Origin: Mytilus edulis
Lineage: Eukaryota
Direction of reading: 5' to 3'
Assembly: GCF_963676685.1 (NCBI RefSeq)
Contig: NC_092348.1
Coordinates: 81,034,001 to 81,098,000, forward strand
Length of the DNA: 64,000 bases
The notes below the pieces were generated by a model. The model searched no databases. It was not told where the DNA came from and saw only the letters and a list, made by a program, of their open reading frames with translations. A program made the position numbers and the translations under genes. The first letter of the stretch is position 1, and the number at the start of each line of letters is the position of its first letter. Positions 1,398 through 41,746 of the stretch are shown one piece after another.

Positions 1398-1591
1398 TTA
1401 GGCAATAGCCTGAGCTACTTTCTCTCGCTGTGTGATGGTGAACTTCTCATAGCATGTTATAACTCGGTTTCTCTGCTCTAGTTGTTTGAGCTCAAAATGT
1501 TCGGCTACTGTAGTTAACTGTGGGTTGTATAGACATCCTGCCATTAGTGATTCCGATCCTTCATCACCTACGTATATCACAAACACATCAG
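1398..1591 (-). CDS. Gene A last coding exon (ADVFVIYVGDEGS...LYNPQL...AQAIA*)
   Basis: Acceptor ATTTCAG. 194 nt long, the same length and phase as the last exon of gene B, with shared motifs. Confidence 0.88.
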
Positions 1592-7500: not shown

Positions 7501-10500
7501 GTATAACTCAATTCTAACATAACTACCATATTTTGCATCTAAAAACTTCACAAGTTTATGGTAGAATCCTTTATTTCTGGAGCTTAATGCAGTAGTTGTC
7601 ATTAATTTTCTGAATGTTTTTTATTTGATGGCGACCAATATGTCCCGTCTGTCTTATATACCTATATGGAGCTATTTTCTTTCAGAACGACAGGTCATTC
7701 TTTTTCAGAATCAACCCGGACGATACCAAGTTTCAATTAAATATGTTCAAAGGCATAAAATAATGACCTGTGTGAGGTCATTATTTTCCTTGATAAAAAT
7801 GCAATTTATAATTTACTTCAAAATTTTATTCGTCTGATAGTTTTTTGTTGCCGATTTGGAAATGTATTTTTTAAAGTTCAATCGATGATAGATGTATTTT
7901 AATTTTAGAAACAAATAACATGAAGTTTTGTTACTTGTTAATTTATCGATACAATAAAGAAAAACCTTAAAATATGCATTATCTATAACATAACTGCATT
8001 CCGGTCCCATTTCACGACGATGCCAATTTAAGAGCGGAATATGCCTACCCTAAGGGCACACAGGAGATCAGGCTATTTAAAGTGAGGCCCGTTTAGCACT
8101 GTCTTTAGATTTCAATGTTGTAATTTGTGTACTTTTGTTTCTCTGTTGAGCATTTTCTTCTTTTATTCATGACGTTGTCAGTTTATTTTTTTGACTAATT
8201 AGTTCGTATGTACCTTTGTTTTGGGGTCAAAAAGAAAAATCTTACTGTACAAAATTAATCCTTGATTCTTCAAAGTTCAGTTTAGCCATAATTAAAAGGA
8301 GTATATAACAGCAATAGAGAGACATAAACACTAGAATAAAACTGTTAAGATTTCAGGCGGAATTTATACTGTTGAGATAGTGTTAAGACATATTTAAGAC
8401 TCAGGAATGGGTCAAGACATATTCAGACATTATTTAGAATGTCAAGAATATGTCAAGACTGATCGAGACAAATTTAAGACAGTCAAGAATTGATCGAGAC
8501 TGATCCATACTCTTATAAGATAATACAGGAAGTGTCGAGAAATATTTAGACAATGTTCATACTGTCAAGACACTGGTCAACAAAATCAAGAACCTTATTA
8601 GACAAATTCATACCATATCAAGATTTGTTTTTAAATTATTCAGACAAATTAAGAATGTCGAGCAAAAATACATTCAAATTCAGACAAAAACTGGTCTTTT
8701 CAGACTTTTTGACTTTTGTAGTGCAAGCTTCAGTAACCATGTAACCTCAAGTTTCCAAAATATTTTACAGAAGCACCAAATTTAAAACATGAGGGCTCTT
8801 TAAACTACCCAAGATATATGTTTATGACCTAGAAATGTTTTACTGCAATGAGATGAAAGAATTAGGTACCTTCAACTGTCAAATTCAAGGGAATATTGTT
8901 TTAGACCTTGTTTCGTATGTAACAGGATGTGACGTACTATGATTTGGTGGTATTACACCTAAAATGTCTTTGCAAAACTTCATATTTTAATTCTCTCTAA
9001 CTGACATACGCATCAAAATGTCGGACAGTATATCTATTATACGATATATGATGGTACGCCCTAATGAACATTCTATCACGATAAAACCTACCTCCCATTT
9101 TACGGCAGGCCTGTACGGTTAATAATTTAATATCTTCTTCATCTTCACCTGGGGTCTCTAAAATAACATCTTTCTGGTTGTGGTCAACAAACACCAATAT
9201 AACTTTACAGTGAGGTATTTTCAACACACTTTTATCGTTGGTGACCACGAAATCTGCTTCGTCCATTTTTTTAATCCTCAGTCGACCCTCAACACTTGGT
9301 CTGGTGATTCTTCTATGTTTATTGTGTGTTTCTTGACTGAAACTTATAACACAGAACTTGTTTTCCAGTTCTTCTGGTTGTCTTCTCTTTATTTGTTCAA
9401 CAATACTTAGGGACTCCTGAAAATGATATTTTTGACTATTATGGCTCTTAGCTTGAAAAGTCTAGCTTCTGATTTGATACCATAAGAATGGGTCGTAATG
9501 GGGGTACCTTCGAATAAGGATAAAAATTATTTGCAAAATGAAGTTAACGTTAATTTTGGTGAATGACGATAAAATATACACTTTCTTTTCTTTTTTCGTG
9601 TTAGACGAATGATGTTATTTTTTTCCGAACATACTGGTAACGATAATCATTTGACACTGAAATTAAAGGGTTAAAGTTATAATTCCCTTATAATCAGAAT
9701 CAGGGCCAAATGATAGATCGGACAAAGTTTAATCACAATTGGCCCAGTGGTTTTACAATAGAAAGTTATATATAATTTTTGCATTAAAAAGACAAAACAT
9801 GCAGGCCTATTGAAATAAAAGACTGTTGGCAGGAGAGGCAAAATGATATACAAAAATGAACATTTTAGTAAGACGTCAATTACCACTGAACTAGTACACC
9901 TGTTTGTTTAGGGGCCAGCTGAAGCACGCCTTACGGTTGCAGGATTTTCGAGCTATATTGATCAATACCTTTTGGTGGTCTTCGGCGGTTTTCTACTCTT
10001 TGGTCGGGTTGTTGTCACTTTGAAACATTACATTCTCAATTTTAACCTTGCATAATACGCATATCTGATCCATCCCCATCCACATTCAATCATTCAAATA
10101 TGAAATACATTGTGACATATATCAATTCTCTTGGTACAGCAAGGCCAGCTGCATTTGGCTTACATTCGTCTGTTATCATTTTTGCACAATTCAGCGGATG
10201 TTATTCTTCTCATGGGCGCATCCAGAACTTTTCATAGGGGACCTAAATGAACCAATTCCAGTCATGCTTCAGTGATTCTCTGTATGATCAACCAAAAATC
10301 CCCCCCCCCCGAAATTTACCTTTGCTTCTTATTAGAAAAAAATAAAGTGTACTTACATACTGCAAAGATGGCTTATCCTTGTTTTCTGTTAGATATCTTA
10401 TTTTCTTTTCAATATCATCAATTTTGTGCTTTCTGCTATATAACAGACCCCCACATATTGACAAAACAGTGATAACAAAAGCAACAGTTGTTCTCTGTAC

Positions 10501-13019
10501 CAGTACCCATTTGTCTTCTATATCTAAAACAAAGTGTACCCATAAATCAAAATTCACATTTGTATGAACTATCATGAAAGACGTTATACTACTAATTTTA
10601 ACATACTGCAAGGGTTGTTTATCCTTGTTTTCTGTCTATTCCATGTCCTTCTGTTATAAAACTGATTACCCTGTACGGTGAAAACAACCAGAACAAAAAC
10701 AACAGTCATTTTCTGTACCAGTAACAATTTTTCTCCGATATTTAATAAAAAAGATACGATGTAAATAATTTCGAATTAAATCTTCTGCATTGTTAAACAG
10801 ACACAACATTATAACTTATTCATATATTTGTTTTGAAACTTCTCTTTCACCGGGTTGAAGGCAAATAAAGGTAACAGTATCCCGTTTTTCAAAAGTCAAT
10901 AATTGATTCAGAGAAAGCAAATCCGGGTAACAAACTGAATCCGAAGGAAACATATCAACTATTAATGTAAGAGGAAAACAACGAAACAACAGAAACACTG
11001 AGGTGCAAAAAACATCGACAATGCGACATACATAGAAACGAACTATTAGATGAAAACTACTATATTCTTGACTTGGTACAGGACAATTAAAGAAAATTGG
11101 TGGGTTAAACCTTGTATGTGGCTAGCCGAACCTCGGGCTTTATGACAATGTTAAATATCCGCTAACTTGACAACATTACATGACAGGAACACAGTACAAA
11201 TAAATGCAAAAAAAAATCAGGACAGAGAAATACAAAAGTAAATAATATAATAGTACATTTCGACATGTTAACCACAGAATTACAAACAATACCATAAATA
11301 ATTACGGACAGTACACAAAACCAGCATAATATAATTACGAACTATGCAAAATCCTCCTCTCAAATGAATAGTAAATTAGGTGAATTCAAACATACATGCG
11401 ACTTAGAATTACGGTACTTACCTGTACTCAGAATTTCTGTAGTTTTGTTTAACATGTGTAATCTGTCGGGTATTTTTGTGATCTCTTCACCATGGGTTTT
11501 TACTTCTTTTATTACAGAACCGACTGATTGATCTGTTTTATCTAATTTCACTCCTATTTTCAATATTTCTTTATGTTGTACAGTTTCCACTAATACCTTT
11601 AAGTTGGCTGACATCATACATTCTGTACTTAAGCGAGCATCAATGGTAGAAACATTCTGATAAATTGTTTTCACATCTTTTTTAATCATTTTATAAAAAC
11701 TGTTTACGTTTGCATCATTATCAAAAACATAATTTTGAGTAAAGTTTTTTAACTGAATCAATTCTTTATAGTTATCGTGCATCTTTTGACTAAACCTGTT
11801 GTTTTCTTGTTGTAAAAATGATGAATCTTTGTTAAATTTTTTCATCTGCATATTCACATTTCTAAGTCTTTCAGTATTGCCATTGAGATCATCTTTTAAA
11901 GTGAGACATTGTTCAATAGATATTTTTACTGTATTCATTTCTTCTTTAATTGTCCCAATAATAATATCTTGATCTGTTATCACAGTTTCTAGCTTTTTAA
12001 CCACGCTATCTAACTCAGACTTTTTCTTGCTCAACACTTCTTTCATTTTTGTTTCAAAATCAATTCCTATTGATCCAACCGACAGAATAAGTTCACTTAT
12101 TTTTTTACTGGCAACTGTCATTCTTTCTTCATTTCTTTTAATTCTTTTTATCGATACTGTACAACTTTCTGTCTTCCTTACAAGATTAGAAATTTTTACA
12201 TTGGATTCTGTCTCTAACTGATTTACTTTTGCAAGCAAACTTTGAGTTCTGGACTGTAAAGTTGCAACTTTTGTATACAATGATAAATTGAAAATAAGGA
12301 TCCCCAATATTCTGAAATGAAACAAATGATTGTGTAAGTATGCTTGCAGGAAAAAAATTAAATCACAAAAATACTGAAATTCGAAAAAAATTCAAAACGG
12401 ACATAAAAAAGTCCCTAATCAAATGGCAAACTCAAAAGCCCAATCACATCACACTAATGGATAACAACTATCAGATTTCTCACTTGGTACAGGCATTTTC
12501 TTATGTAGAAAAATGTGGATTGAACCTTGTTTTATACCTAGCTAAAGCTCCCACTTGTATGATAGTCACCATACTCGCGTTTTATTTAAACCACTACAAA
12601 GGAAAACCCTTGTTAAAACAAAATATCAAAAGTTTGCTTCCGTTCTAAATCTCAACATTGTGTTACATTTTGGTGGTGTGTTTCTATTGTGTCATAGTTC
12701 TCCTCTTATAATTGATGTGTTTTCCTCAGTTTTAGTTTGTAACCCAGATTTGGTTTTTTTTTTCTCAATCGATTGATGAATTTCGAACAGCGGTATACTA
12801 CTGTTTCCTTTATTTTCGAATGAAATCTGAAGAACATCTTTTTTTTCACAGATATCTTTCACTAATAGTTGTCACCCTTATTTTTAACTTCCTTATGCAA
12901 ATTATATGTTTTTTGATTAACAATCTGTACGAAATAATAAAACAAAAATATATATACCCCAACAACAGAATTATTAATAAAGACAGTTGTCTGTAAACAT
13001 AATGATTCTCTGAGGTCAT
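1398..13019 (-). CDS. Gene A (5 coding exons: 13019-12958, 12311-11422, 10523-10357, 9416-9092, 1591-1398), 545 aa: TM1 - coiled coil - TM2 - cytosolic alpha/beta (TIR/SEFIR-like) domain protein
   Basis: All introns are GT-AG. Exon lengths 62+890+167+325+194=1638 nt splice in frame to a single stop. The intron phases match paralog B and the C-terminal domains align without gaps. The start codon is less certain. Confidence 0.85.
2100..2900 (-). mobile_element. Penelope-like retroelement RT remnant (degenerate)
   Basis: FLINNIFVTFEGRVFQQTVSIPMGTNCAP and FRYIDNVLSLNN motifs. Upstream TKPLSKLLTSFLSAIK is also PLE-RT-like. Confidence 0.75.
3430..3720 (+). mobile_element. Decayed retrozyme, left part (hammerhead at ~3531-3574; GAAA mutated to GAGG)
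   Basis: Homologous to the 354-bp unit and interrupted at 3720 by a TIR element. Confidence 0.75.
3721..7238. mobile_element. Non-autonomous TIR DNA transposon, PIF/Harbinger-like (~180-bp imperfect TIRs, 3-bp ATT TSD)
   Basis: Left end AGACATGTTCACCATAAGCCG...(CCGAAA)n...GAGTATTACTTCAATTCA, with its inverted counterpart at 7064-7238. ATT at 3718-3720 and 7239-7241. Confidence 0.72.
4807..6538 (+). mobile_element. Helentron/HINE-like non-autonomous element with internal ~502-bp tandem repeats
   Basis: CCCTATGTTCTATT..GCCATGGCGGCCATCTTGG recurs at ~5324, 5827 and 6329. It ends in a (GAC/GGAC)n microsatellite followed by GAGCTAAAAA. Confidence 0.65.
7242..7490 (+). mobile_element. Decayed retrozyme, right part (degenerate hammerhead at ~7405-7447)
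   Basis: Continues the unit from the point where it was interrupted at 3720. Confidence 0.72.
8329..8723. mobile_element. Possible CACTA-type MITE with internal TCAAGAC-like subrepeats
   Basis: CACTA at 8329, TAGTG at 8719-8723 and many (GT)CAAGAC units. The TSD is not clean. Confidence 0.4.
9092..9416 (-). CDS. Gene A coding exon 4: N-terminal part of the cytosolic alpha/beta domain (ENKFCVISFSQET...VILVFVDHNQKDVILETPG...TVQACRKMG)
   Basis: Acceptor TTTTCAG and donor G|GTAGGT. Clearly homologous to 28301-28619. Confidence 0.88.
10357..10523 (-). CDS. Gene A coding exon 3: TM2 (TTVAFVITVLSICGGLLY) followed by basic SRKHK
   Basis: Acceptor TTTGTTTTAG and donor TAT|GTAAGT. Phase 1 in and phase 0 out, exactly as needed to join exons 2 and 4. 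Confidence 0.82.
10603..10745 (-). pseudogene. Degenerate tandem duplicate (pseudo-exon) of gene A TM2 exon
   Basis: Shares TACTGGTACAGA..ACTGTTG.TTTTGTT and ACAGAAAACAAGGATAA....TTGCAGTATGT with exon 3. It has an internal deletion and has lost the acceptor AG. Confidence 0.75.
11422..12311 (-). CDS. Gene A coding exon 2: end of TM1 plus ~285-aa coiled coil
   Basis: Lies within ORF 11360..12325. Acceptor TTTCATTTCAG and donor G|GTAAGT. K/E-rich heptad-like sequence. Confidence 0.88.
12958..13019 (-). CDS. Gene A coding exon 1: MTSENHYVYRQLSLLIILLLG (short tail plus first half of TM1)
   Basis: ATG at 13019 and donor GG|GTATAT in phase 2. It joins ILGILIFNLSLY of the next exon to give one continuous hydrophobic helix. 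An acceptor-like TTTTATTTTAG lies near 13134. Confidence 0.7.
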
Positions 13020-14469
13020 TCTTGAATAGTGGCTTGACTGATCGGTTTGCCTCTGTGTCAGCTAATTTTGTGTCCTCTGTTTTATCTTCTCCGCAAACTG
13101 TTGTGCACGGGTTCTGCTATTTTTGGAGTATTTCTAAAATAAAAGACATACTATCATTCGCAAAACAGTCGTAAAGAACGTGCAATGTTCTTTGATTTTT
13201 CCATATCGAACTCACAGATAATAACTGAAGACCTTGAGATGACTTCCTAAACAAAGAACAGATCTGCATTTTAAAGGTATTCTTCCTTTACTAAGCAGAG
13301 TTCAGAACGACTGACAAACAAAAGTTACCCAAAAGTGTATATTCCTAAATATATTTAAAAAAAATACACAGTTAAAATATTTTGTATTTATCATAGTGTG
13401 CATAAAACATTGCTGATAAAAGTTAAAGAAATGTATATTGATATTTACAGAATAACTGTCTAAATACAGCATGTCATACAATGTAGAAGACAGCTGACCA
13501 GCTGAGATCATTACCTGTGTTCGATGGTAGCTTAATCTTTAGTGTTCTACGTGGTGAGTTGTAAACTAGCAGTTTTCTTTTAATCTTTTTCAATCTTTTT
13601 ACCATTAGGGTTTTTTTTTCGTTTTTTTTTTTACTTATGATTTTGAATAATACTTTGGTATCCTGGCATCTTTTACTATAAACCATAGTCATAATGCCTA
13701 AAATGGGAGCCACTTTAAAAACGTTAAAAAAGATATCTAAGAATGTTCAGTACTATTACAATTTGAAGATTAGATAAAATATCTTTCATTTTAAGTTTAA
13801 AAGGGGGTATGACAATCATGAATAGACACATATATTCTATATTGTAAGACTCACCCGCAAATTTAGAACTAATTAACATTTAATTTGTTAAAAAATATTG
13901 TATATTTTTAAGGTTCAAAATGTGAAATTCTTCAAGTAGCTTAAAAGTGATTAAAACTCACGAATGTCGCCAGCTGTTATCTTACATGTTTGTTATGTCG
14001 TGTTTAATGGTTTTTATCATTAAATGATATCGTGTAAATTGTAGACCTTTAAGTGTCTTTAGTTAAAGGTTATATCTTGACCTCTTGAGGTCATTCATTT
14101 AATGATTTTAATATTTTTGGTTAAGATGGGATCGACATATATGCGTTATGAAATGTATTCTTTTGTTTTAGGAATGACTGCAATACTAATATTGCTTATA
14201 TCTGCGAAGAAATAACATCATACACGTAGTGCACACTGTATAATCCGCACAATGTGTCATTTAAAAGAAGAGTGCACTATATTTGTTAGGTTATTTAAAG
14301 CATTACTTGTTGGGTTCGTGTTGCTAAGTCTTCAGTTTTCTATGTTTTGTCTTATGTACTATTGTCTGTTTGTCTTTTTTCTTTTTGTATTTGATTGCAT
14401 GTGCATATTAAATTTATTTCAAGAAAACACAATGCAAAAGACATTCAAACTATTATTTTTAACTAATAA

Positions 14470-15170
14470 TTCTTACATCATTTGCATATCTATAAATACT
14501 TGAATTGGATTGGTCAATTCGAATTTTGCTGTTGGTTTACACTTCGATAAACCATGTTTCCGAAACTACTTTCGTAATCTATTCATGCGCGATACACATT
14601 CTTGCGGGGATACTGGGATTTTCAGCAAATTGCGATTATAAAACAATTGCTTAACAGTTGTTTCTATTCTAATGCATATATAACCCAAAAAAAAGAAATA
14701 AAACAAATGCACTAAAGCTTCAAAAATGTATGAAAATAAAATTTACATAAAATTCCGCGAAATGTCATGGAGGATTTGCCGAATTTACGTCTTGGCATAA
14801 CACGACGTCATACGGGGGGAAAGATTATTTCGTTACGTTGACGCTTCAAATTCGGCTAATATTTAATTAAAATGAAGTTTTTGAGGGAGGTGCTATATTT
14901 CATTTTTGATTCTGATGCATTAATCGGACATTTATTGATTTTATAAAGTTAAGATGGCGGCGTACTCCTTAGTTGCGACAGGTCATTGTGCTTTGATGGC
15001 AAATATAGCAGCCATACAACAAATAATGTAAATTAATAATCGCGTATGTTTGGCTGAAGAACTAGAAGGATTAAACACATTTTTTCTAGATGTTATTGAT
15101 GTGTAAACCGGGTCTCTTACTCCCCGGTTTACACATCAATAACCTCTAGAAAAAATGTGTTTAATCCTAT
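14470..15170. mobile_element. Hairpin-ended non-autonomous element (terminal ~46-bp-arm palindrome at 15067-15168)
   Basis: AGGATTAAACAC...AACCGGG / CCCGGTT...TTAATCCT. The body shares motifs with 26170-26400. The left boundary is approximate. Confidence 0.55.
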
Positions 15171-23701: not shown

Positions 23702-23704
<3 letters not shown>

Positions 23705-23741
<37 letters not shown>

Positions 23742-27002: not shown

Positions 27003-27130
27003 CTCATGATATTGCACGGACAATATATTCTTTTTGTGAAATGTTAAATGTTTTATATACACTGATATACACTCATATACACTGAAACATCTCTGGTTGT
27101 TTTCCAATCTCTGAAAGACATGATAATTGT
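27003..27130 (-). repeat. Tandem duplicate of the 3' part of gene B last exon, in the 3' UTR
   Basis: Closely resembles ~27132-27240, with two extra 10-bp ATATACACTG/C units. Confidence 0.75.
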
Positions 27131-27131
27131 C

Positions 27132-27325
27132 TTATGATATTGAACGGACAATAGATTCTTTTTGTGTGTTGTTAAATGTTTCATATACACTGAAACATCT
27201 CTGGTTGCTTTCCAGTCCCCTTAAGACCTGATGACTTGTAAAAGCGGACAATTCCTGGTTATACAAATTACCCGGAACTAACTGATTTGATCCTCTGTCC
27301 CTCACATATGTCACAAATACATCAG
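27132..27325 (-). CDS. Gene B last coding exon (ADVFVTYVRDRGS...LYNQEL...VRSIS*)
   Basis: Acceptor TGTTACAG. 194 nt long and homologous to 1398-1591. Confidence 0.88.
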
Positions 27326-30300
27326 CTGTAACATAAATATTAGATAAGTTTTTGATGCATAAAACTTACTGTTAAACATATAAAACAAGAATGTGTCCAT
27401 AGTACACGGATGCCCCACTCGCACTACCATTTTCTATGTTTAGTGGACCGTGATATTGGGGGTAAAACTCTAATTTAGAATTTAAATTAGGAAGATCATA
27501 TCATAGGGGACCATAGGGGAAGTTAACCTGAAGCGGGACAGACGGACGAACGGACGCACAGACCAGAAAACATAATGCCCCTCTACTATCGTAGGTGGGG
27601 CATAAAAAAACTTTCTAATCAAAATAACTCAGGAAGTTAATCGTCTTAGTCAACAATAAAATGAGAACTGACCTCACATCAATGTTGTGTTGCACAGTGG
27701 AGGCGCCAAAACACAATATGATGTCTGCGGCAGCGACTGTTATTATGTATGGCAAGAGGTCACCTAAGAATGAGCTAAACGGTATTGTAATGATTCTTTG
27801 TCATGTACGTGCACAGAGTTTAACTCTTTATGTATCAAAACAATTTACTAAGACGACGGTCCATTAAAAAGTGCAACAAATGATTACAGGACTGATTAAT
27901 GTGATCTGTATTATCGATGACGTGGGAAGGCATCTTGGTGTAGCATTATAGCTTCGATTGCTGGAAATAATGGGTTCGGATCCAGCCAGGATCCAACCTA
28001 GACATTAAAGGATTCAGCGAAAAAAATAGTGGGCTCGAAATAAATTGGCGTGGTAGGGTGGCATGTTTTCCTGCGAGCTGTATAACAATATGGCAGCTGT
28101 TATCAATAATTCGTTCCTATATATGTTGGCGTTTGTTTTTGTAGCTGTTCAGTGTTTCTTGTGTTTCGTTGTTTTCCTCTTACACTTGATGTGTTTTGTT
28201 TTTTGACAAAGATTAGTCTCAGTTAAATTGATTTATAACTATCGAACAGCGGTATACTACTATTGCCTGTATGTACAATTGTTTTATGTAAAAGACTTAC
28301 CACCAAGTTTCTGAGCAGCTTGTACAGTCACAAGCTTCTTATCGCCTAAGTCCTGTCCAGGATTCTCTAAGATCACATTGCGCTCATTGAAGTCGACAAA
28401 TACAAAGATGTATCTTGCACCTGGAATATTTAGGATATCTTCATGTCTCCTGACCAGATGCTGAATGATTTCTATGTTTCCTCCTCTATTCTTTGTTGCT
28501 AGAGCCGACTTTACCAATTGTTTGTGCAAATTCATAGTTTCAGAGTAAAAACTCAATACACATACTTTGTTATCAAAGACCGGAACTCTTTGGATCCTAT
28601 CCAGTATACTAGGAGCCCTCTAAAATAGTAGCGAAAAACTCCATTCAAACAGTTTAAATATGTTAATACTATTAAGTAAAAGAGGAACGAAAGATACCAG
28701 AGGGACAGTCAAACTCATAAATTGAAAATAAACTGACAACGCCATGACTGAAACTAAAAAGACAAACTGAAGACACAACATTGAAAACTAAACACTAAGC
28801 AACACAAACCCCACCAAAAACTTGGGGTGAAATCAGGTGCTCCGGAAGGGTAAGTTTATCCTGCTCCAAGTGAGTACACATGCTAGATAAGACACAATGC
28901 CGTTATGAGTTTTCTTATTTTCATTTTGTAAATGAAAATAAATCTGAAATTTGATCCTGCTTTCATAGGGAATCGTTTCGTTCACTCAAAAACACATTCG
29001 TACCATACACGTTCACAACTTGGGTCCGTTAAACTCTGGGTTTTTTTGGTGATTAAAAGATTGATTATCAATAATGTTTTATATAAGATTATTTTTAATT
29101 GGTATTCTCAAAGCTTATTTGATATTAGTGTAATGTGTTTGGTGTAAAGTAAAATACTAAAGTTAGCGTGTAGGAGAAAAAACAATGAGGAATGTTCATG
29201 AAAAAATGAAAATTAACAGTTTGTTACTAATTTGATAGTCGTTTAAAAAATTAATCAGTTAAAAAAAACTTTAAAAAGGGTGCAAACGTGTGAAGTGCGA
29301 CGCGACCCCCTGCAAAGGCGAAAGAGAAGGTGAATCAACCAATTCGTTTCAATTTGCTAAATCAATTCTTTCCAACAGTGTTAAACCATTTGGACTATTA
29401 AAACAACCTTATTACTTTTAAATCTACTGTATATACATGTATGTGTACATGGAAAACATTCGTAAATATAAATCGAAATGCAGACATCTTATACGTTCAG
29501 GTATTTCACATTCAATTTTTTATGGTAATATGTTTTACAAAGCACAAGAATGTCGGCAACAGACTTATTTGAAACAAGGGATATAGTTACGATACTGTTG
29601 TCAGGCTATAAAAGATGGCATATTTGGCTTTATATTGATTCACTTATATGGCCAATTTTTGGCATGATACAGGTTATTTTCTTCTTATATATTTTATGAT
29701 GGTAGGATATTAAACTCCTGACAGGAGAGATTGTGCTTGGTATTTATATGATGAAGACATATTTTTTCAATCAGTTGAATTGAGATCAGGAGCTGGCATG
29801 TCAGTAACGTTTAGTAGTCCTTTTTTGATTTATGTATCATTGTCATTTTGTTTAGTTTCTTTTGTTACCTCATCTGACAGCACACTCAGTCTTCTTTTAA
29901 ATAGAATTGGCTAGATGTATTGAGGTAGGTTTGAGATCTAAAAAAAACCATATTAACTACGCCGCATTTTTGCGCCTGTTCCAAGTCAAGAGTCGCTGGC
30001 CTTATTTGTCTCGTGTGATTTTTAGATTTAGTTTCTTTTATATATTTCGGAGATGAGTATGACGTCCATTATCAATGAACACATTTGTGTTTAGGGGCCA
30101 GCTGCAGAAAGACTCAGGGTGTGAGATTTTCTCGTTGTCTTGAATACACATAGGCTGTTTTCCGCTCTTTGATCGGGTTGTTGTATCTTTGACAAATCCC
30201 CCATTTCCAATCCGAAATCTTATATAAAATAAATATGAGTAATAATTAAACATGTATTTCTTTTGTTAATACTGTATATGATAGCATCTATCTTAGCAAA

Positions 30301-33300
30301 TATTTCTTTACACTATTAATTAGTCCAGTCAACCTAGGAAAATGTAATTGCAACAGAATATTTTTAAGTTTTAATCTTTAGCATTATAACCCAATTATAC
30401 ATAGAAAAAGTCAAACAAAATAATTTGAGGAAATTAAAAAATCACGATTTTAAATTTCCTATGGAGATTTGCATTGAAATGGGAGATATAAACTCTACAA
30501 AAAAGGCAGAAATATCAATAAAAATTGATTAAAAATTATAACTTTACTACTTCTATTCAGCAGAAAGTTTTGATTCTTGATATTTTGGCCGTATTAGAGT
30601 ATTACAAAAGGATATAAATGTGTTCTCATATATCTTTTATCAAACTTGAACCTAAATTTCGTAATTCAGTAATTGACCATTTATTTAATTTTTCAACATG
30701 TCAAGGTAAAGAATCTCAAATTAAATAAAAATAATCAAACGTATATTCTTCTGTTTGTGGTTTAAAGTTTCTTTAAACAAATATAATTTACAGATATAAA
30801 AAATACCAAATTTTCACAATATTTTTTTAAATAGTCACTCAGCCATAAATTTGCAGCTCTGTAATGAAAAATGCACCCAAAAAAAGAGTACTCATAACAC
30901 TTTGGTTTTATTCATTTCATGTGCAGAAGATGATATATCAAAGTCAAATACGAACGTATATCCCCATTAAAGCATCAGTCTTTATTTGAATTTTAAGAAA
31001 CTGACTCATTTTTTCCCCTTTCCAATGTAAATTTCCATGCATTTATCAAAAGAATGAATTAATGTTGCGCCTACCATTAAACAATAAAATGAATTAGTAA
31101 AGCACGCATGAATTAAAATAATATATATGAAATTGTGTTGTTGCATGTTCATATATACACGCGTTCGTATATATTTAGTAACTTCATAAATTCTCATTGC
31201 TTCTTAAAATATTTAAAGACATTCTTATATTTTACCAAGATGAAATGATTTGTCTTCTTTCTATTTACAGAGGGAAATGATAACATTAAATTGAAGTTTT
31301 ATCTGTTTTTCAACTTATTTTTATTATCATTATATACAATAACGTTTTCCTGTGAAATCATAATTGATACCGCCCGCGTTAAACTGAGACAAACATTAAA
31401 AAGTTTTAAGTTTTTACAGGGGATGTAATATTTTGTCACTAGATTTTCCACTGTAGTTTATAAATCTCGTCTATATCCGCTTTACCATTAATTAATTTTC
31501 AAAGAATGTAGTAGTTTATAGCATATATCTGTTCATGTTTATTAACCCATAGAAACACTACTTCTTATTTATATTGTATAATTATATTTTTTGCGCTTTT
31601 TTTAAATTTTAAATAAAGGCAACAGTAGTATACCGCTGTTCAAAACTCATAAATCCATGGACGAAAAACAAAATCGGGGTAACAAACTAAAACTGAGGGA
31701 AACGCATTAAATATAAGAGGAGAACCACGACCCAACATTAAAATGTAACACACACAGAAACGGACTAAGCATTAGACAAAATCATATGAGAATAACAAAT
31801 ATAACATCAAAACCAAATACATGAACTGGGGATAGATAAGTTAGATAAAATAATATAAAACATTGTTTAAACTAAACACTAATACTGAATGCTATATTTT
31901 GTCGGTATTTAAATGTGGCATTGCACAAGGTTTGATTTTCTAAAGTGCAGGAAATTTATTTCCCCTGAATCCATAGGAGGTGTGCATATAGGCATCTTTT
32001 TCTGGGAAATCGTGATCTATTTATTAGCCGATAAAACAAAAAGCACTCAAATAACAGTTCTGTTCTTTTGATTAATTTCATGCTGAACATTAATTATTTT
32101 TGTTTTTTGGCTTTTTAATTTTGTAACAAAATTACCTGTGACAAAAAGGGTGGAGTCGAATGCGATTCTATTCTCTCATGCTCTCTAAATTGCGTTCCGC
32201 CATTATCATAGCGATAATATGTCATATAAAAAAGCGCACCAATCAACATAAATGCCAAAGCTACACATACATTGATGGGTTGGAACAGTCCTACAATGAA
32301 ACGTTTCTTAAATTAGAAGTATTTGATAGTATTTTATGTTTTTCTGATGCCAATATAAAATAAACTTTACTTATTGGATTCAATTAATATTCTTATTCCT
32401 ATATGTGTCTTGAAAAAGTTAAGTCAATTGAGTAAACCTTGCGAAATAAGTGCATGAATAAGTCAAATTGAATTTTACGATGAGAGGGAACGTTTTCTAA
32501 CTCACTTTTAGAATGTTTTGTCAAACGTAAAAGTAACTCTTTAATTACTGTAACATTTCAACTTCATCGTAGCCAGTGCCTACTGAAAATATGTTTTTAT
32601 GATTATTTAATAAAAATAAATATAAATATTTTGATAAAAAAAAAGACTGTGGAGTCTTATAATTTATAATTCATTTATATTATCAAATTTCAACTGTTTT
32701 CTTATATCCTTGTTTTTCTGACGGAAAATTGTTATACAAATATTGATATAATATATAACAATAAACTAGAGTATATTTATAACAAATGATAATATCACTA
32801 CAATTTAATTTATAATACGGTGAAGTTGAATTCCCTGTCATTTATTCACATCTACACATGAAATTGTCACATGAAAAACTATATCTATATACCTTAACCT
32901 AACTTTCAAGTATAGAAATGTGATTTTTATTTTGAGTCAAGTGCTTGTGACCATCCACTCAAATTTGTGGTAATCCGATGTTCAGTACTTCAGTACTTTG
33001 AATACTTTTGAAAGTTTATTTTTAACTATTACGGATTTTGTCTATGTATAACAGCTTTAGATATAGAGGACACAACTTAAACTTTACCTCTTTGTTCTAG
33101 TTTGGGCCGTTTCGGTATTGAGGCGAGGTTGTTGGACACATTTTCAAAACTATTTACCAAAATAATGATTGATGTTAAGTGGAATATTAAAACAAGTATG
33201 CTTAGGGCCATTTCGGTATTGAGGCGAGGTTGTTGGGCACATTTTCAAAACTATTTACCAAAATAATGATTGATGTTAAGTGGAATATTAAAACAAGTAT

Positions 33301-36300
33301 GCTTAGGGCCATTTCGGTATTGAGGCGAGGTTGTTGGACACATTTTCAAAACTATTTACCAAAATAATGATTGATGTTAAGTGGAATATTAAAACAAGTA
33401 TGCTTAACATCTTTTTTACAATGATAGTTTTAAAGTTTGATATCCTATATTGAAAAGTAAATCAAGTCAAGTTTTAAAAAAAATGATTGCTTAATTTTGC
33501 AATTAAGATTATAACGTATCATATAAGGAATCGTATTCCAGATACAATCTAAACAATAACGGTTTACAAATTGCATATAAATATTGTTTAGATTAATCCC
33601 GAATTTAAGTCCAACTACAAACATCCTAAATCGTGAATGCTTACTGCAAAACAAAAAATATTATATTTAAATTATGTTAAATATTTCACAGCCGAATCGA
33701 TTTAAAACGTGGAGACACGGATGCAGGCCTCATTTGTATTGTTCAGAGACCTGACTCTGTAATCTTATCATTGATTTTATTTGCAGATTATCAAATTTTA
33801 AGATATAAAAGCATCTGTGACGATTCATGCCAACTTCATAATACCCATTTATATTTACTTATTAAAAAAGTTGCATAGTTGCTAAAAAAAACTACATACC
33901 CGTATTTTGTGATTGCAGATTCCTAACTTGGATATCAAGTTCCCTGACTTTGGGACCCGTGTATTCTTCAAATAATTTCATTTTATTAACATCTTTGCTG
34001 AGGGAATCCACATTACTTTTAAAATGTCCAAGCTTCCCGTTGTAATCGTCTACTTTGGTAACCATGCTTCCTATTTTAACTTCTGTTTTGGAAATGTCAG
34101 TATTTAATTCACTTGTCTTCTCTAAAATTTTACCTTTCGATGTTTCTAAATCTTCTGATAATTTCGTCAATCTATGTGTTAAGTTGTCGTCAGTCTTTGA
34201 TATGTGTTGTTTGAGCTTTGTTATATCTTCATTAGACAGCTTTACTTGCTCTTCAATATTTGTCTGTTGTTCCACAGCAGAAGAAACTGCATTACTTACA
34301 CTTTCTGATGATTCCTTCAAATCTTTTAATCTCGACTCAGTATTATTTACTTCCATTTCTAAATCACGAAGTTGAACTTTATTATCCTCAAGGCTCCTTT
34401 GCATTAGAGGTAAAAGCTGATAACTGCTCCTAATCAAGGTAGCAGATTTGTTCATATTTTCTAAAGTAGGCAAATGTTTATTAATTTCATTAATTACTGT
34501 ATGTACTTCAGAGACAGATGTGTTGACATATTCAGCTTTATCACTTGCTTTGTTTAGCAAAACATTAAGACTTGTTTGATTTTGAAATGCTATTTCAAGT
34601 TTTTTCTTAATATCGGTCGTTTCATTGTTCATTGAGTCGATAGTTTTTGAGAAGTTTGAAATATCATTATCTGCCCTGGCAAGGGTTTTAGTAATTTCAA
34701 TAAATGTTTGCTGCTGTTGTGGTAAATCGACTTCCAGTTTACTACTGATCCCCTCTGTTAACTTTATTCTCATTTCTACGTTTTTCAAGGTATCGTTTGT
34801 TGTAGTCATCTTACTTTGCAAAATAACGACATGTGTATCAATATGTACTAATCGTTCCTCTAGTTTCAATAAATCGACATCTAAAATTGGCACTTTTTCG
34901 GAAAGTGTCTTCACTTTTTTCAAATATTCTTCATATTTCATCAACACTGCAAATTTATTTTCGATCTCGTATTGAGCTCGAATTATGTATACTGCCACAG
35001 CCATTGTAAACACTACAGCAGGTCTGAAAAGTGGATTGGTAAAATATATCGCAAACAATTCTTATATTTCAAAACCATTTAAAAGTCCCTTTGTAAACTC
35101 AAGTTAAGGCAAACGATCAAACAGCAGTGTAATATTATTTTTCTTGAGACAACTATTTAATTTGAATTTTCAATTTGGGATTGCAAAATACTATCCATGT
35201 GCGTGTGTGGATTGTTATTTTGATACCTACTATAAACATGCAGAAAAAATAAAACCGAATATACATTGCAAGCACAACTACAAGAACTAAAATATGAACA
35301 GAATTTAATGAGAAAAATTAAAACAAAGATTTGTTCATATTAAGTGAGCACATATCGACATATAATTATACGAAACAAATTACACAAACAGCTGCTTTGT
35401 GTTGTCTCGTACTTGTAATAATCAAGGTGCTCTGTGTTTAAGACTTCACTCAATATGACTCTATATATGTCACTATGCAGTTGCTTTGGGTTTTGCAAAG
35501 TATTTACAGGTGTTTTCTATGAAAAACTCATTAATTTAAAATATATTTATACCTTAAACATTTGATACATTTAAAGTTTAAATAAAGGCAAAACTAGTAT
35601 ATCGCTGTTTAAAAGGAAAATCAAGTCGTTAATATTCACAGAAATAAATACATATTGTCTGCACGCATATTATCACAACAAATTCAGTTAAAATGCTGTT
35701 CTTACATTCTACATATGGTTAATTGATGACGAAAATTGATAAGTATTGTTTGTGAAAGCCTTATGAAGCATTTGTCCTTTTTATCAAATGGATATCATAT
35801 ATTGCACAGTTGCGGCAAATATATAATAATATATCACACCTTTATGCGATTGCTTGTGCGACCAGTAACAGTGGTATCATTAATGGCATATCCACTGATA
35901 TGTCATCCCTAAGCAACGTTGGTACAATGTTAAAATAATGATGACTGGTATAGTTGCAGTGTACAGTATATCGTATGAGAGAAGTTTTCACAATAGAACA
36001 AAATACGAGGCTACGTCAGTTTAATGCTTTTCAAGTTTAAATAATTCAAAATGCAAAAGAAGTATTTAGATTTAGTCATAATTCGATTAAGCAAACCAAA
36101 TCCAGGTAACAAGTCATATTTTGACTATTGTATTTATTGTGTCTGTTTATTTAACGCATCAATGTAAAAATATCGGAAATTGATGAGACTGTCATTAAAG
36201 TGAGAGAGTTAGCGCTATAGAAACAGGTTAAATCCACCATTTTCTACATTTGAAAATGCCTGTACCAAGTCAGGAATATGACAGTTTTTGTCCATTCGTT

Positions 36301-39300: not shown

Positions 39301-41746
39301 TAGAGCAATTCACTATGCTGTTGAATATTAATCCTCTCAAAAAAATGTTTGAAGAAATTTTCTTTTTTATTTATGAAATTTCAAATGAGAAAAATTGAAC
39401 CCAATTTTTTTAATCACATCCCCCTTTCCCTTATTCCAAAACTAATCTCAATTAAAATTTCTAATGGAGTTTGCAACAATAACTACTCATTTAAATACAT
39501 CATAAAATATTAAGATGTAAAAAAACTGCTTGTTATCACTGAATGGTAAAGATTATTTTAATTTATCAGTTGGTAGTAAAAAGTGAATATACATTGTATA
39601 TTGTATATAACAAAGATTTAAGTTGATTCTGGACAAAGAAAGATAACTCCAATTAAAAAAAAATATTGCTATTGCACAATATTTTGCAATTAGATATTTC
39701 TTGCTTACTATTCTGGACAAAGAAAGATAACTCTAAGTAAAAAAAAATTTGCTATTTCACAATATTGTGCAATTAGATATTTCTTGCCATTGCGCAATAC
39801 TGTGCAATTGAAAAGACTTGCTATTGCACAATACTTAATATAATAATTTTAGATCCTGATTTGGACCAACTTGAAAACTGGGCCCATAATAAAAAATCTA
39901 AGTACATTTTTGGATTCAGCATATCAAAGAACCCCAAGATTTCAATTTTTGTTAAAATCAGACTAAGTTTAATTTTGGACCCTTTGGACTTTAGTGTAGA
40001 CCAATTTGAAAACAGGACCAAAAATGAAGAATCTACATACACAGTTAGATTTGGTATATCAAAGAACCCCATTTATTCAATTTTTGATGAAATCAAACAA
40101 AGTTTAATTTTGGACCCCGATTTGGACCAACTTGAAAACTGGGCCAATAATCAAGAATCTAAGTATATTTTTAGATTCAGCATATCAAAGAACCTAACTG
40201 ATTCATTTTTTGTCAAAATCAAACTAAGTTTAATTTTGGACCCTTTGGACCTTAATGTAGACCAATTTGAAAACTGGACCAAAAGTTAAGAATCTACATA
40301 CACAGTCATGACAGTTAGATTCGGCATATCAAAGAATCCCAATTATTCAATTTTGATGAAATCAAACAAAGTTTAATTTTGGACCCTTTGGGCCCCTTAT
40401 TCTGTTGGGACCAAAACTCCCAAAATCAATACCAACCTTCCTTTTATGGTCATAAACCTTGTGTTTAAATTTCATAGATTTCTATTTACTTATACTAACG
40501 TTATGGTTGGTAAACCAAGAAAAATGCTTATTTGGGTCCCTTTTTGGCCCCTAATTCCTAAACTGTTGGGACCTAAACTCCCAAAAGCAATACCAACCTT
40601 CCTTTTGTAGTCATTAACATTGTGTTTAAATTTCATTGATTTCTATTCACTTAAACTAAAGTTATTGTGCGAAAACCAAGAAAATGCTTATTTGGGCCCT
40701 TTTTGGCCCCTAATTCCTAAAATGTTGGGACCAAAACTCCCAAAATCAATCCCAACCTTCCTTTTGTGGTCATAAACCTTGTGTTAAAATTTCATAGATT
40801 TCCATTCACTTTTACTAAAGTTAGAGTGCGAAAACTAAAAGTATTCGGACGACGACGACGACGCAGACGACGACGCCAACGTGATAGCAATATACGACGA
40901 AATTTTTTTCAAATTTTGCGGTCGTATTAAACGGATTACAAGAATGTAAGATAATTAAATTAAGATTTAGAATATTGATATAGTTCCCAATGAACGAGAA
41001 CACATATTATGACGTCTTTGTATAGGTTAATTTGCGTTTTGAGATTAAGAAGAATTGGTGGTACACATTTATAATTATTCGCTAACTATTTAATTTTTAC
41101 TTTAAAACAAATTAATTAAGTTTTATTCTGGAACCGAAAATAATAGTCCCATGTTTATCGTACATCAGTAGCAATGCGATTTCATAAATCATCTGAGATT
41201 TAAAACAACATTCTTACTTTCAACCTGATAAAGGGTTTACATTAACATAACACATGACAATCTAGCTAACGAAACTGCTATTTCAGTGAAAGAACAGAAC
41301 ACTAACTACAAGTATATCTTACTGTATCGTGATAACAAAGTTTGGAAATAGTGTAATCTAAATAGTGATGTAGAGTTTCAAGAAATAATACACTTAAATA
41401 TAATAACTGAATTAAGCTCGTCAAATTTTATCTAAATAAATAACATTTCTACAAATTAAACTTACATGGACAATTTAAAGGTAAATACGTCTGATGCTCG
41501 GCCCAAACTCTGTTCTTTTCGATCTTTTGATGACGTCTGTAAAACAGTTGGACTGTTTTCTTCATTATCAGAGAACTCATGATTTGGGTCTGGGTCGTTT
41601 GTTGAAGAATATATTGGTGTATTGCGCTGATTAGGTTCTGTGTCGTTTGTTGAAGAAGAAATTGTTTTATTGCGCTGATTTGTTTCTGGGTCCTTTATTG
41701 TAGGATGTTTAGTTTTACCTTTTCTTTCTTCTTTCGGGGATGCCAT
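27132..41746 (-). CDS. Gene B (5 coding exons: 41746-41466, 35023-33900, 32290-32136, 28619-28301, 27325-27132), 690 aa; paralog of gene A with the same architecture
   Basis: GT-AG introns. Exon lengths 281+1124+155+319+194=2073 nt give an uninterrupted ORF with phases 2,1,0,1. Confidence 0.87.
27384..27605 (+). mobile_element. Short HINE/Helentron-like element
   Basis: AACAAGAATGTGTCC start, (GACG/GACA)n microsatellite and terminal ATGCCCC...GGGGCAT hairpin followed by an A-tract. Confidence 0.6.
28301..28619 (-). CDS. Gene B coding exon 4: alpha/beta domain part 1 (DNKVCVLSFYSET...YIFVFVDFNERNVILENPG...TVQAAQKLG)
   Basis: Acceptor TATTTTAG and donor G|GTAAGT. Homologous to 9092-9416. Confidence 0.88.
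31612..31840 (+). repeat. Dispersed interspersed repeat (other copies at ~10860-11200 +, 12480-12813 -, 18340-18600 -, 28130-28270 -)
   Basis: Shared AAATAAAGGCAACAGTAGTATACCGCTGTTC end. Confidence 0.65.
32136..32290 (-). CDS. Gene B coding exon 3: TM2 (GLFQPINVCVALAFMLIGALFYMTYYRY...)
   Basis: Absent from the ORF track and found by hand. Acceptor TTTCATTGTAG and donor CAG|GTAATT. Open frame, phase 1 in and phase 0 out. Confidence 0.82.
33104..33406. repeat. Tandem repeat, 3 x 101 bp, near-identical
   Basis: The unit GGGCC(G/A)TTTCGGTATTGAGGCGAGG...CAAGTATGCTTA occurs at ~33104, 33205 and 33306. Confidence 0.9.
33900..35023 (-). CDS. Gene B coding exon 2: TM1 (IPAVVFTMAVAVYII) plus ~355-aa coiled coil with 8 N-X-S/T sequons
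   Basis: ORF 33892..35058. Acceptor CTTTTCAG and donor G|GTATGT. Confidence 0.9.
35655..36010 (+). repeat. Local duplication: uninterrupted copy of the sequence at 36430-36472 plus 37393-37710
   Basis: Shared CAACAAATTCAGTTAAAAT, CATATATTGCACAGTT, CTAAGCAACGTTGGTACAATGT and ATAGAACAAAATACGA. Confidence 0.75.
36604..36647 (+). ncRNA. Type I hammerhead ribozyme, copy 1 (predicted cleavage after C36641)
   Basis: CUGAUGA, GAAA and GUC core. Stem I GCGUCA/UGGCGU, stem II GUCU/AGAC, palindromic stem III ACGCGCGU. Confidence 0.88.
36958..37001 (+). ncRNA. Type I hammerhead ribozyme, copy 2 (predicted cleavage after C36995)
   Basis: Same core as copy 1. The stem I 3' strand reads UGGCAU (one change). 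Confidence 0.85.
37312..37355 (+). ncRNA. Type I hammerhead ribozyme, copy 3 (predicted cleavage after C37349)
   Basis: Identical to copy 1. Confidence 0.88.
39108..40930 (+). mobile_element. HINE/Helentron-like element with internal tandem arrays
   Basis: Subterminal TATACGACCGCA at the 5' end is matched by a 3' TGCGGTCGTAT hairpin. It also has a (GAC)n microsatellite and internal repeats of TTTTGGACCC/GACCAA.TTGAAAAC. Confidence 0.7.
41466..41746 (-). CDS. Gene B coding exon 1: low-complexity hydrophilic N-terminal tail (MASPKEERKGK...) with a 16-aa internal repeat
   Basis: ORF 41462..41746 with good ATG context (AAAATGG). Donor AT|GTAAG in phase 2. An acceptor TTTTTGCAG lies just upstream. 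Confidence 0.75.

What the first reader, a model, noticed from the sequence alone, without database searches (positions are those of the whole stretch)
1398..41746. Tandem gene pair encoding a doubly membrane-anchored coiled coil fused to a cytosolic TIR-like domain: candidate undescribed receptor family
Seen in sequence: two spliced ORFs with identical intron phases and the layout tail-TM1-coiled coil(~285/355 aa)-TM2-alpha/beta domain. The coil carries many N-X-S/T sequons (8 in B; NFT, NVS and NKT in A), and TM2 of A is followed by basic RKHK, so the coil is probably extracellular or luminal with both termini cytosolic. Established knowledge: a coiled coil anchored at both ends is the working principle of tetherin/BST2 (TM plus GPI), and TIR-family receptors (TLR, IL-1R, and IL-17R via SEFIR) are normally single-pass with LRR, Ig or FN3 ectodomains. 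Inference: this could be a tether-and-signal receptor that bridges membranes or budding particles and oligomerises a cytosolic signalling or enzymatic domain. The ORF track shows only disconnected pieces and misses the TM2 exon of gene B.
Basis: partly seen in the sequence, partly recalled or inferred. Interest (0 to 1): 0.85.

Follow-up and report, generated by a model that had tools for sequence, protein, structure and literature searches.

The report
Mussel two-anchor coiled-coil membrane proteins
Two neighbouring mussel genes encode members of an unstudied, mollusc-wide family of membrane proteins: a long, probably sugar-coated coiled-coil rod held in the membrane at both ends and joined to a conserved domain inside the cell that has a common fold and no recognisable sequence family, so what they do is still unknown.

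Summary
Two intact five-exon genes lie in tandem on the minus strand. All eight introns are GT-AG with phases 2,1,0,1, giving 545 aa (A) and 690 aa (B). Both read: tail, TM1, heptad coiled coil (285/360 aa; 3/8 sequons), TM2, about 165-aa C-terminal alpha/beta domain. RefSeq models in other Mytilus assemblies match exon for exon (545 aa, M. californianus; 690 aa, M. edulis, 97-100% identical), all "uncharacterized" or misnamed after myosin-like proteins.

A profile search found 124 clusters. Every member whose source I looked up is a mollusc (bivalves, abalone, a chiton), and most full-length members keep the layout.

- **Topology:** sequons are enriched in the inter-TM rod (200 observed, 116 expected) and depleted in the C-terminal part (40 vs 55). 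This supports rod outside, both termini cytosolic.
- **Evolution:** the rod evolves fast (dN/dS about 0.7) and the C-terminal domain slowly (0.01-0.16).

"TIR-like" is therefore only a fold-class statement. The tether-and-signal function is untested. No RNA reads could be laid.

The parts
12958..13019 (-). Gene A exon 1: start codon, 11-aa N-tail and first half of TM1; the donor leaves phase 2
   Evidence: Matches the N-termini of Mytilus proteins P0007 and P0008.
11422..12311 (-). Gene A exon 2: second half of TM1 and the 285-aa heptad coiled coil with 3 N-X-S/T sequons
   Evidence: 66% identical to the M. californianus 545-aa protein P0003.
10357..10523 (-). Gene A exon 3: TM2 followed by SRKHK and the juxtamembrane linker
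   Evidence: 95% identical to P0008.
9092..9416 (-). Gene A exon 4: first 108 aa of the C-terminal alpha/beta domain (strands 1-3, the invariant Glu of the (V/I)I(L/I)E motif, and one helix)
   Evidence: The six-row profile A1 that includes this exon found 124 clusters.
1398..1591 (-). Gene A exon 5: last 64 aa of the domain (strands 4-5, the invariant Gln) and the stop codon; it follows a 7.5-kb intron full of repeats
   Evidence: 95-97% identical to P0003 and P0008.
41466..41746 (-). Gene B exon 1: start codon, about 90-aa Ser/Thr/Asn/Pro-rich N-tail and the start of TM1
   Evidence: 99% identical to residues 1-94 of the M. edulis 690-aa protein P0163.
33900..35023 (-). Gene B exon 2: the rest of TM1 and the 360-aa heptad coiled coil with 8 sequons
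   Evidence: 98.7% identical to P0163.
32136..32290 (-). Gene B exon 3: TM2 and the juxtamembrane linker; this is the small exon absent from ORF lists
   Evidence: 98% identical to P0163 residues 468-520. TM score 2.1.
28301..28619 (-). Gene B exon 4: first 106 aa of the C-terminal domain (FVDFNERNVILENPG motif)
   Evidence: 97% identical to P0163.
27132..27325 (-). Gene B exon 5: last 64 aa of the domain and the stop codon
   Evidence: 100% identical to P0163 residues 627-690.

Best explanation
A and B are intact, diverged tandem paralogues in a Mytilus genome. Judging from P0163 it is M. edulis or a close relative. They belong to a mollusc-wide, uncharacterised family of two-pass membrane proteins.

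Shown here:
- the five-exon models;
- two hydrophobic segments flanking a long heptad-periodic helical segment;
- a C-terminal domain of about 165 aa that always ends the protein, folds as a five-strand alpha/beta sandwich, and has an invariant Glu and Gln;
- the same layout in most full-length family members scanned.

Inferred:
- TM1 acts as a signal anchor, so the N-tail stays cytosolic.
- The coiled coil lies in the lumen or outside the cell and is N-glycosylated.
- TM2 returns the chain, so the conserved domain is cytosolic.

Most likely mode of action (inference, unproven): a receptor- or sensor-like protein. A fast-evolving extracytoplasmic rod, anchored at both ends, reports a change in binding or oligomeric state through TM2 to a strongly conserved cytosolic output domain. 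That domain would bind a ligand or partner, or catalyse a reaction, at the pocket holding the invariant Glu. Topologically this is the plan of bacterial two-TM chemoreceptors and sensor kinases (from my own knowledge) as much as of tetherin.
For: - **Gene models:**. They match RefSeq models P0003 (545 aa) and P0163 (690 aa, 97-100% identical).
- **Heptad signal:**
- **Family:** 124 clusters at E<=1e-3. All 31 hit clusters looked up that carry a source name, and every named hit, are molluscs, including abalone and a chiton.
- **Layout conserved:** about 45 of the 76 family proteins of 250 aa or more scanned show two hydrophobic segments at the threshold used, with the second one 40-60 aa before the domain. 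In the 76 family proteins with the whole domain, the chain ends 50-86 aa after the exon-4 profile, mostly 62-72 aa.
- **Topology:** over 44 two-TM members, sequons in the inter-TM segment are 200 observed against 115.6 expected. In the part after TM2 they are 40 against 54.6. Net charge is +1.2 on the C-side of TM2 and -0.3 on the loop side. There is no invariant Cys in the C-terminal domain.
- **Modular evolution among paralogues in this genome:** for domain exon 4, dN/dS is about 0.01 (dS 0.33) and 0.16. For the coil exon, dN/dS is about 0.7.
- **Domain model:** pLDDT 90.8, pTM 0.88.
- **Full-length model of P0003:** helical from residue 6 to 347 with two breaks.
Against: - No RNA reads, protein data or localisation for this genome.
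- Topology rests on statistics over related sequences, which inflates significance. The positive-inside signal is weak: 20 members against 13 at TM2.
- Two Mercenaria members carry Ig/FN3 domains N-terminal to TM1. If these are really extracellular, the topology would be inverted. They lack a signal peptide and may be fused models.
- The arrangement of the rod is unknown: full-length pTM is 0.37.
- The receptor function is an inference from architecture and evolutionary rates only. Coiled coils evolve fast even without diversifying selection.
Confidence: 0.6

Rival explanations
1. The C-terminal domain is a true but very divergent member of the TIR/STIR superfamily. It signals by TIR-type oligomerisation or cleaves NAD+, with the invariant Glu after strand 3 as the catalytic residue.
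For: - Five strands alternating with helices, as in TIR domains.
- The Atlas structure search lists DUF4062, ThsB and TIR_2 clusters at TM 0.49-0.54.
- Nucleoside 2'-deoxyribosyltransferases, which from my own knowledge share the catalytic-Glu position with TIRs, recur in Foldseek.
- The invariant Glu lies 9 residues after strand 3. From my own knowledge, the TIR catalytic Glu lies in about that place.
Against: - No TIR, TIR_2, SEFIR or DUF4062 hit at E<=1 on the exons and three orthologues. None of these is among the 25 families most often matched across 61 members at E<=0.1.
- hhalign against 29 TIRs of the same genome gives probability 1.1% and aligns the wrong strand. Against SEFIR it gives 0.65%.
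- Residue-level superposition was not available.
Confidence: 0.25
2. The C-terminal domain is a degenerate G domain (pseudo-GTPase) that acts as a protein-binding scaffold, as IRGQ and CENP-M do.
Against: - No Walker A/G1, DxxG or NKxD motif in the family alignment.
- Only five strands, and a short helix between strands 2 and 3. From my own knowledge, TRAFAC GTPases have an antiparallel hairpin there.
- The margin over TIRs and receiver domains is about 1 Z unit, which the tool counts as a tie.
Confidence: 0.15
3. Tetherin-like physical tether: a parallel dimeric rod anchored at both ends that holds enveloped virions, vesicles or two membranes together. The cytosolic domain would be secondary.
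For: - A coiled coil anchored at both ends with sequons in the rod.
- Tandem, copy-number-variable, fast-evolving rod exons, as expected of host-pathogen interfaces.
Against: - No sequence relation to BST2.
- The second anchor is a TM helix, not GPI.
- The rod is about three times longer than the roughly 100 residues I recall for tetherin's coil.
- The most constrained part is the cytosolic domain, not the rod.
- Dimer prediction gave no verdict.
- There are no expression or infection data.
Confidence: 0.1
4. Inverted topology: the coiled coil is cytosolic (a golgin- or cytoskeleton-linker-like rod pinned at both ends) and the N-tail and C-terminal domain face the lumen or outside.
For: - Mercenaria members with Ig and FN3 domains N-terminal to TM1.
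- From my own knowledge, most long coiled coils in eukaryotes are cytosolic.
- The positive-inside signal is only weak.
Against: - Sequons are 1.7-fold enriched in the rod and depleted in the C-terminal part.
- No signal peptide on any inspected member, including the Ig/FN3 ones.
- Cys number in the C-terminal domain varies and none is invariant.
- Basic residues follow TM2.
Confidence: 0.12

Closest known systems
Tetherin / BST2
   Same: A coiled-coil rod with membrane anchors at both ends and N-glycosylation sites in the rod. The N-terminal anchor is a signal-anchor-type TM with a short cytosolic tail.
   Different: No sequence similarity. The second anchor here is a TM helix followed by a 165-aa conserved cytosolic domain, not a GPI anchor. 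The rod is 285-750 aa against roughly 100 (tetherin figure from my own knowledge). The family is restricted to molluscs, and dimerisation is untested.
TIR-domain receptors and enzymes (TLR, IL-1R, SARM1, plant and bacterial TIRs) and SEFIR (IL-17R/Act1)
   Different: No HMM or profile-profile match. No box 1/2/3 motifs. Two-pass rather than single-pass. A coiled-coil ectodomain instead of LRR, Ig or FN3. Structural similarity is no better than to G domains.
Bacterial two-TM chemoreceptors and sensor histidine kinases (Tar, NarX, EnvZ type)
   Same: The plan N-in, TM1, extracytoplasmic helical domain, TM2, cytosolic output domain. This is an analogy from my own knowledge.
   Different: No homology. 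The extracytoplasmic part here is a very long heptad rod, not a compact four-helix bundle. There is no HAMP, kinase or methyl-accepting domain.
TRAFAC G domains and pseudo-GTPases (EngB/YsxC, EngA, IRGQ, CENP-M)
   Different: No G1-G4 nucleotide-binding motifs. Five rather than six strands. Sequence identity is 7-12%.
CLIMP-63 / CKAP4
   Same: A type II membrane protein with a long luminal coiled coil. This is an analogy from my own knowledge.
   Different: CLIMP-63 has one TM only and no C-terminal cytosolic domain. There is no sequence relation.

Membership tests
TIR (Pfam PF01582 / PF13676, STIR clan) | Match to a TIR-family profile HMM at or near the curated threshold | tested here: not met
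   No TIR, TIR_2, DUF4062 or ThsB hit at E<=1 on the window's exons or on P0003, P0004 and P0008. None of these is among the 25 families most often matched over 61 family members at E<=0.1. The same genome has at least 150 canonical TIR matches elsewhere.
TIR (Pfam PF01582 / PF13676, STIR clan) | Conserved box 1 / box 2 (BB loop) / box 3 motifs in register with the strands | tested here: not met
   hhalign of the 53-sequence domain profile against 29 TIRs of this genome gives probability 1.1%. Only 10 columns align, pairing strand 4 with TIR box 1. Power is low: the TIR-versus-SEFIR control gave 3%.
TIR (Pfam PF01582 / PF13676, STIR clan) | Flavodoxin-like five-strand fold that superposes on solved TIR domains clearly better than on other folds | tested here: inconclusive
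TIR (Pfam PF01582 / PF13676, STIR clan) | Catalytic Glu in the NAD+ pocket, or TIR-TIR assembly | not testable with these tools
   An invariant Glu (P0014 E79 = P0003 E460) lies after strand 3. No residue-level superposition or assay was available.
SEFIR (PF08357) | Profile HMM or profile-profile match | tested here: not met
   No Pfam hit. hhalign against 6 SEFIR domains of this genome gives probability 0.65%. The 24 aligned columns pair strand 1 and a conserved His in register, but the match is not significant.
Tetherin / BST2 | N-terminal TM, extracellular coiled coil and a C-terminal GPI anchor | tested here: not met
   TM1 and a heptad coil are present. The second anchor is an internal TM followed by about 200 further residues, not a C-terminal GPI signal. 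No BST2 family is listed for any exon or orthologue at E<=1, nor among the top 25 families over 61 members.
P-loop GTPase (G domain) | G1 Walker A GxxxxGK[ST], G3 DxxG and G4 [NT]KxD motifs | tested here: not met
   Absent from the 14-sequence domain alignment. The loop after strand 1 reads SFxxxT...H with no glycine-rich motif.
The mollusc family itself (no name; defined here by profile A1) | C-terminal domain with the (V/I)I(L/I)E motif and invariant Gln, preceded by TM2 within about 60 aa, with a long helical segment and TM1 upstream | tested here: met
   Both window genes meet all points. Of the 76 family proteins of 250 aa or more scanned, about 45 show both hydrophobic segments, and 44 were usable for the two-TM statistics. 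The domain always ends the chain.

The most novel reading that the evidence does not exclude
The family is a mollusc-specific class of innate-immune receptor. A hypervariable, glycosylated rod anchored at both ends captures or senses particles or membrane distance. It then switches on a new cytosolic enzyme or signalling domain, a very distant TIR/NADase-like relative that uses the invariant Glu. That would be a tether and a signal generator in one chain.
Probability: 0.12. Interest if true: 0.85.

Novelty: new variant of a known kind. Interest (0 to 1): 0.5.

Why it matters
Molluscs lack adaptive immunity and have large, poorly understood lineage-specific receptor repertoires. This family has several unusual features:
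- It is old, shared by chitons, abalone and bivalves.
- It is tandemly expanded and varies in copy number among Mytilus species.
- It has an unusual design: a long rod pinned to the membrane at both ends.
- It pairs a fast-evolving outer part with a cytosolic domain under very strong constraint that no domain library covers.

If the domain proves to be an enzyme or signalling module, it would add a new output domain to animal membrane receptors and a second, independent use of the tetherin principle.

If not, it is still a well-defined orphan family and a new domain worth a Pfam entry. It is currently misnamed in databases as myosin-, paramyosin-, KIF15- or LRR-like.

Tried and rejected

- Exons were searched one by one by reference. 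Database orthologues (P0003, P0014, P0016, P0163) served as full-length proxies.

**Searches that found nothing useful**
- Pfam on the exons, on orthologues and on 61 members gave only coiled-coil families.
- PADLOC: nothing.
- PDB by sequence and by profile: only INTS13 at E 0.014, not significant.
- Viral fold library: nothing at E<=0.001.
- The Atlas feature search gave only weak, unnamed clusters.
- Four literature searches gave nothing relevant: TIR / bivalve / coiled-coil terms, twelve LOC identifiers, and tetherin plus mollusc.

**Tests without a usable result**
- Homodimer prediction of the rod (P0003 residues 31-323, two copies): no verdict, score 0.01. It counts neither for nor against binding.
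- The full-length AF2 model has pTM 0.37, so the geometry of the rod (hairpin, arch or straight) cannot be read from it.

**Rejected**
- Gene fusion or mis-splicing artefact: the same layout recurs in RefSeq models of several species and in compact transcript-like contigs.
- A cleavable signal peptide in place of TM1: in B and many relatives TM1 lies 60-550 residues from the N-terminus.
Full report
**1. What is in the window**

The window is AT-rich animal DNA, 31-37% G+C over the gene region, from a 1.37-Gb genome. Protein hits identify the genome as Mytilus.

On the minus strand I placed two five-exon genes from stop-free frames, splice-site inspection and colinearity with database proteins.

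- Gene A exons: 12958-13019, 11422-12311, 10357-10523, 9092-9416, 1398-1591. Length 545 aa.
- Gene B exons: 41466-41746, 33900-35023, 32136-32290, 28301-28619, 27132-27325. Length 690 aa.

All eight introns are GT-AG. The phases are 2,1,0,1 in both genes, and no exon has an internal stop.

Exons were searched singly by reference, and full-length database orthologues were used as proxies.

**2. Independent support for the models**

- The M. californianus RefSeq protein LOC127700774 (P0003) is 545 aa and colinear with A's exons.
- The M. edulis RefSeq protein P0163 is 690 aa and matches B's five exons at 97-100% identity, with the same boundaries. This includes the small TM2 exon, residues 468-520.
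- Several assembled contigs are too short to contain introns yet hold whole proteins of this layout: 545 aa in 1959 nt (P0004), 687 aa in 2421 nt (P0169), 379 aa in about 1.45 kb (P0025) and 629 aa in 2808 nt (P0062). All of them have both hydrophobic segments. I infer that these are spliced transcripts.

**3. Anatomy**

- TM1 straddles the exon 1/2 junction. TM2 is its own exon, and in A it is followed by SRKHK.
- Between them lie 285 aa (A) and 360 aa (B) with almost no Pro or Gly.
- The hydrophobic periodicity there is 3.54 and 3.50 residues. Its power is 3.8-4.1 against 0.8 +/- 0.3 in shuffles, and 0 of 200 shuffles reach it. This is a genuine heptad coiled-coil signal.
- A carries NFT, NVS and NKT. 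B carries eight sequons.
- An AF2 model of the full-length orthologue P0003 is helical from residue 6 to 347, with breaks at 94-100 and 213-219. Its pTM is 0.37, so the spatial arrangement cannot be read from it.

**4. The family**

A profile of exon 4 from the six copies in this genome (A1) found 124 clusters at E<=0.001 among 1.84 billion representatives.

Every hit whose source I looked up, 31 clusters plus the named hits, is a mollusc: five Mytilus species, Pecten, Crassostrea, Saccostrea, Tegillarca, Mercenaria, Mya, Mactra, Dreissena, Potamilus, Sinanodonta, Solemya, Haliotis and the chiton Liolophura. Their names are 'uncharacterized' or borrowed from coiled-coil proteins (myosin-, paramyosin-, KIF15- or LRR-like).

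Of the 76 family proteins of 250 aa or more scanned, about 45 show two hydrophobic segments at the threshold used. The second lies 40-60 aa before the domain, and the segment between them is 60-750 aa long. In the 76 family proteins that carry the whole domain, the chain ends 50-86 aa after the exon-4 profile, mostly 62-72 aa.

This genome has six copies, all on the minus strand of one chromosome: four at 80.92-81.06 Mb (three A-type and B) and two at 77.05-77.09 Mb. M. galloprovincialis lists at least six adjacent loci, LOC143079071-77. In a tree of the domain, the A-type copies form a Mytilus-only clade on a long branch. B groups with the 77-Mb type and lies nearer the family consensus.

**5. 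Topology**

- Over 44 two-TM members, the inter-TM segment holds 200 N-X-S/T sequons against 115.6 expected from composition. The part after TM2 holds 40 against 54.6.
- Net charge in the 15 residues after TM2 is +1.2, against -0.3 on the loop side. At TM1, K+R is 2.0 on the N side against 1.45 on the loop side.
- No Cys is invariant in the C-terminal domain.

Together these favour N-in, rod out, C-in. The sequences are related, so the statistics overstate the significance, and the charge bias is weak.

One caveat: two Mercenaria members carry Ig and FN3 domains N-terminal to TM1. They have no signal peptide and may be fused models, but if real and extracellular they would argue for the inverse topology.

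**6. The C-terminal domain**

No Pfam family matches it in the exons, in orthologues or in 61 members. PADLOC finds nothing. No solved structure matches by sequence or by profile.

I folded the natural domain-only protein P0014 (M. trossulus, 164 aa) with a 61-sequence alignment. The result is pLDDT 90.8 and pTM 0.88, with five strands alternating with helices.

| Search | Result |
|---|---|
| Foldseek against PDB | E >= 3.6e-4, TM <= 0.52: IRGQ, flavodoxins, nucleoside deoxyribosyltransferase, RRS1 TIR |

The tool's own note puts these values in the range common for models with no clear relative. The Atlas structure search likewise mixes DUF4062, flavodoxin and TIR clusters at TM about 0.5.

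Profile-profile alignment to 29 TIRs and 6 SEFIRs taken from this genome is not significant (1.1% and 0.65%). The TIR-versus-SEFIR control is not significant either (3%), so this test cannot exclude a very distant relation.

There are no G1, G3 or G4 GTPase motifs. The strictly conserved polar residues are one Glu, in (V/I)I(L/I)E nine residues after strand 3, and one Gln in the last helix. Nearly invariant are an Asp and a Ser after strand 4, and an Arg before strand 5. That pattern suggests a functional pocket at the C-terminal edge of the sheet.

So 'TIR-like' is acceptable as a fold-class description but is not shown as family membership.

**7. Evolutionary pattern**

| Comparison within this genome | dS | dN | dN/dS |
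|---|---|---|---|
| Exon 4, A vs the 80.923-Mb copy | 0.33 | 0.004 | about 0.01 |
| Exon 4, A vs the 81.007-Mb copy | 0.68 | 0.106 | 0.16 |
| Coil exon, A vs the two neighbouring paralogues | 0.58-0.61 | 0.40-0.42 | about 0.7 (40-42% identity) |

DNA similarity between paralogues stops within about 20-40 nt of the exon 4 and 5 borders.

The output end is therefore under very strong purifying selection, while the rod is nearly free or diversifying. The lower dS of the 3' exons also leaves room for exon-limited gene conversion. The pairing of coil and domain exons in the two neighbouring paralogues is assumed from their order on the chromosome, not verified.

**8. Reading**

The best-supported explanation is a two-pass, receptor-like membrane protein with three parts:
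- a cytosolic tail;
- a glycosylated extracytoplasmic coiled-coil rod pinned at both ends;
- a conserved cytosolic alpha/beta domain of a new sequence family.

That it senses and signals is an inference from architecture and rates. The plan resembles bacterial two-TM sensors as much as tetherin.

The rivals remain open, with the odds given in the report sections: a true divergent TIR or NADase, a pseudo-GTPase scaffold, a pure tether, and an inverted topology. A homodimer prediction of the rod returned no verdict and is not evidence either way. I found no paper on these genes.

**9. Verdict**

The genes are already predicted in public annotations but are unnamed and unstudied. I rate the finding of moderate interest (0.5). 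It is a clean, ancient, mollusc-specific orphan family with an unusual double-anchored rod and an unclassified conserved domain, but it has no functional evidence yet.

Noticed in passing
window 36469-37392 (hit at 36958-37001, + strand): A tandem array with a period of about 354 nt lies in intron 1 of gene B. One copy reaches Rfam's gathering score for the type I hammerhead ribozyme (35 bits, threshold 34). Similar short reading frames recur in gene A's long intron (about 3.4-3.7 kb and 7.2-7.6 kb).
   Followed up: partly
window 47592-49241 (+): An intact 549-aa open frame with a reverse-transcriptase domain (RVT_1, E 3e-38). It is a retroelement upstream of gene B. I observed it only and did not analyse it further.
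   Followed up: partly
window 2172-2815 (-): Open frames with a reverse-transcriptase-like motif lie inside the 7.5-kb intron 4 of gene A. The 2172-2603 frame has no Pfam hit at E<=0.001. They are probably a decayed retroelement.
   Followed up: partly
window 5000-6520; L003 and L007 (G000:C5:80.95 Mb): A tandemly repeated element of about 500 bp lies in intron 4 of gene A. Copies 72-84% identical sit next to the coil exon of a paralogue about 90 kb away.
   Followed up: no
P0072 and P0065 (Mercenaria mercenaria RefSeq): These family members have Ig (x3-4) and FN3 (x3) domains N-terminal to TM1 but no signal peptide. They are either real fusions that bear on topology or merged gene models.
   Followed up: partly
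G000:C5:80.92-81.02 Mb (L002-L010) against window gene A: Divergence among A-type paralogues is mosaic. Exons 4-5 are nearly identical (dN 0.004-0.007, dS 0.15-0.33) and the coil exons are 40% identical (dS about 0.6). DNA similarity ends within about 20-40 nt of the exon borders, which may reflect exon-limited gene conversion.
   Followed up: partly
window 41466-41746 (-), N-tail of gene B: The 90-aa tail is rich in Ser, Thr, Asn and Pro. It contains an internal repeat of about 19 aa (NQRN...SSTND twice) and is likely disordered.
   Followed up: no
whole genome G000: At least 150 matches to the canonical TIR model were scored out of 655 candidates, mostly in long single open frames (TLR-like). 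There are six SEFIR matches. This illustrates the large innate-immune repertoire of this mussel.
   Followed up: no
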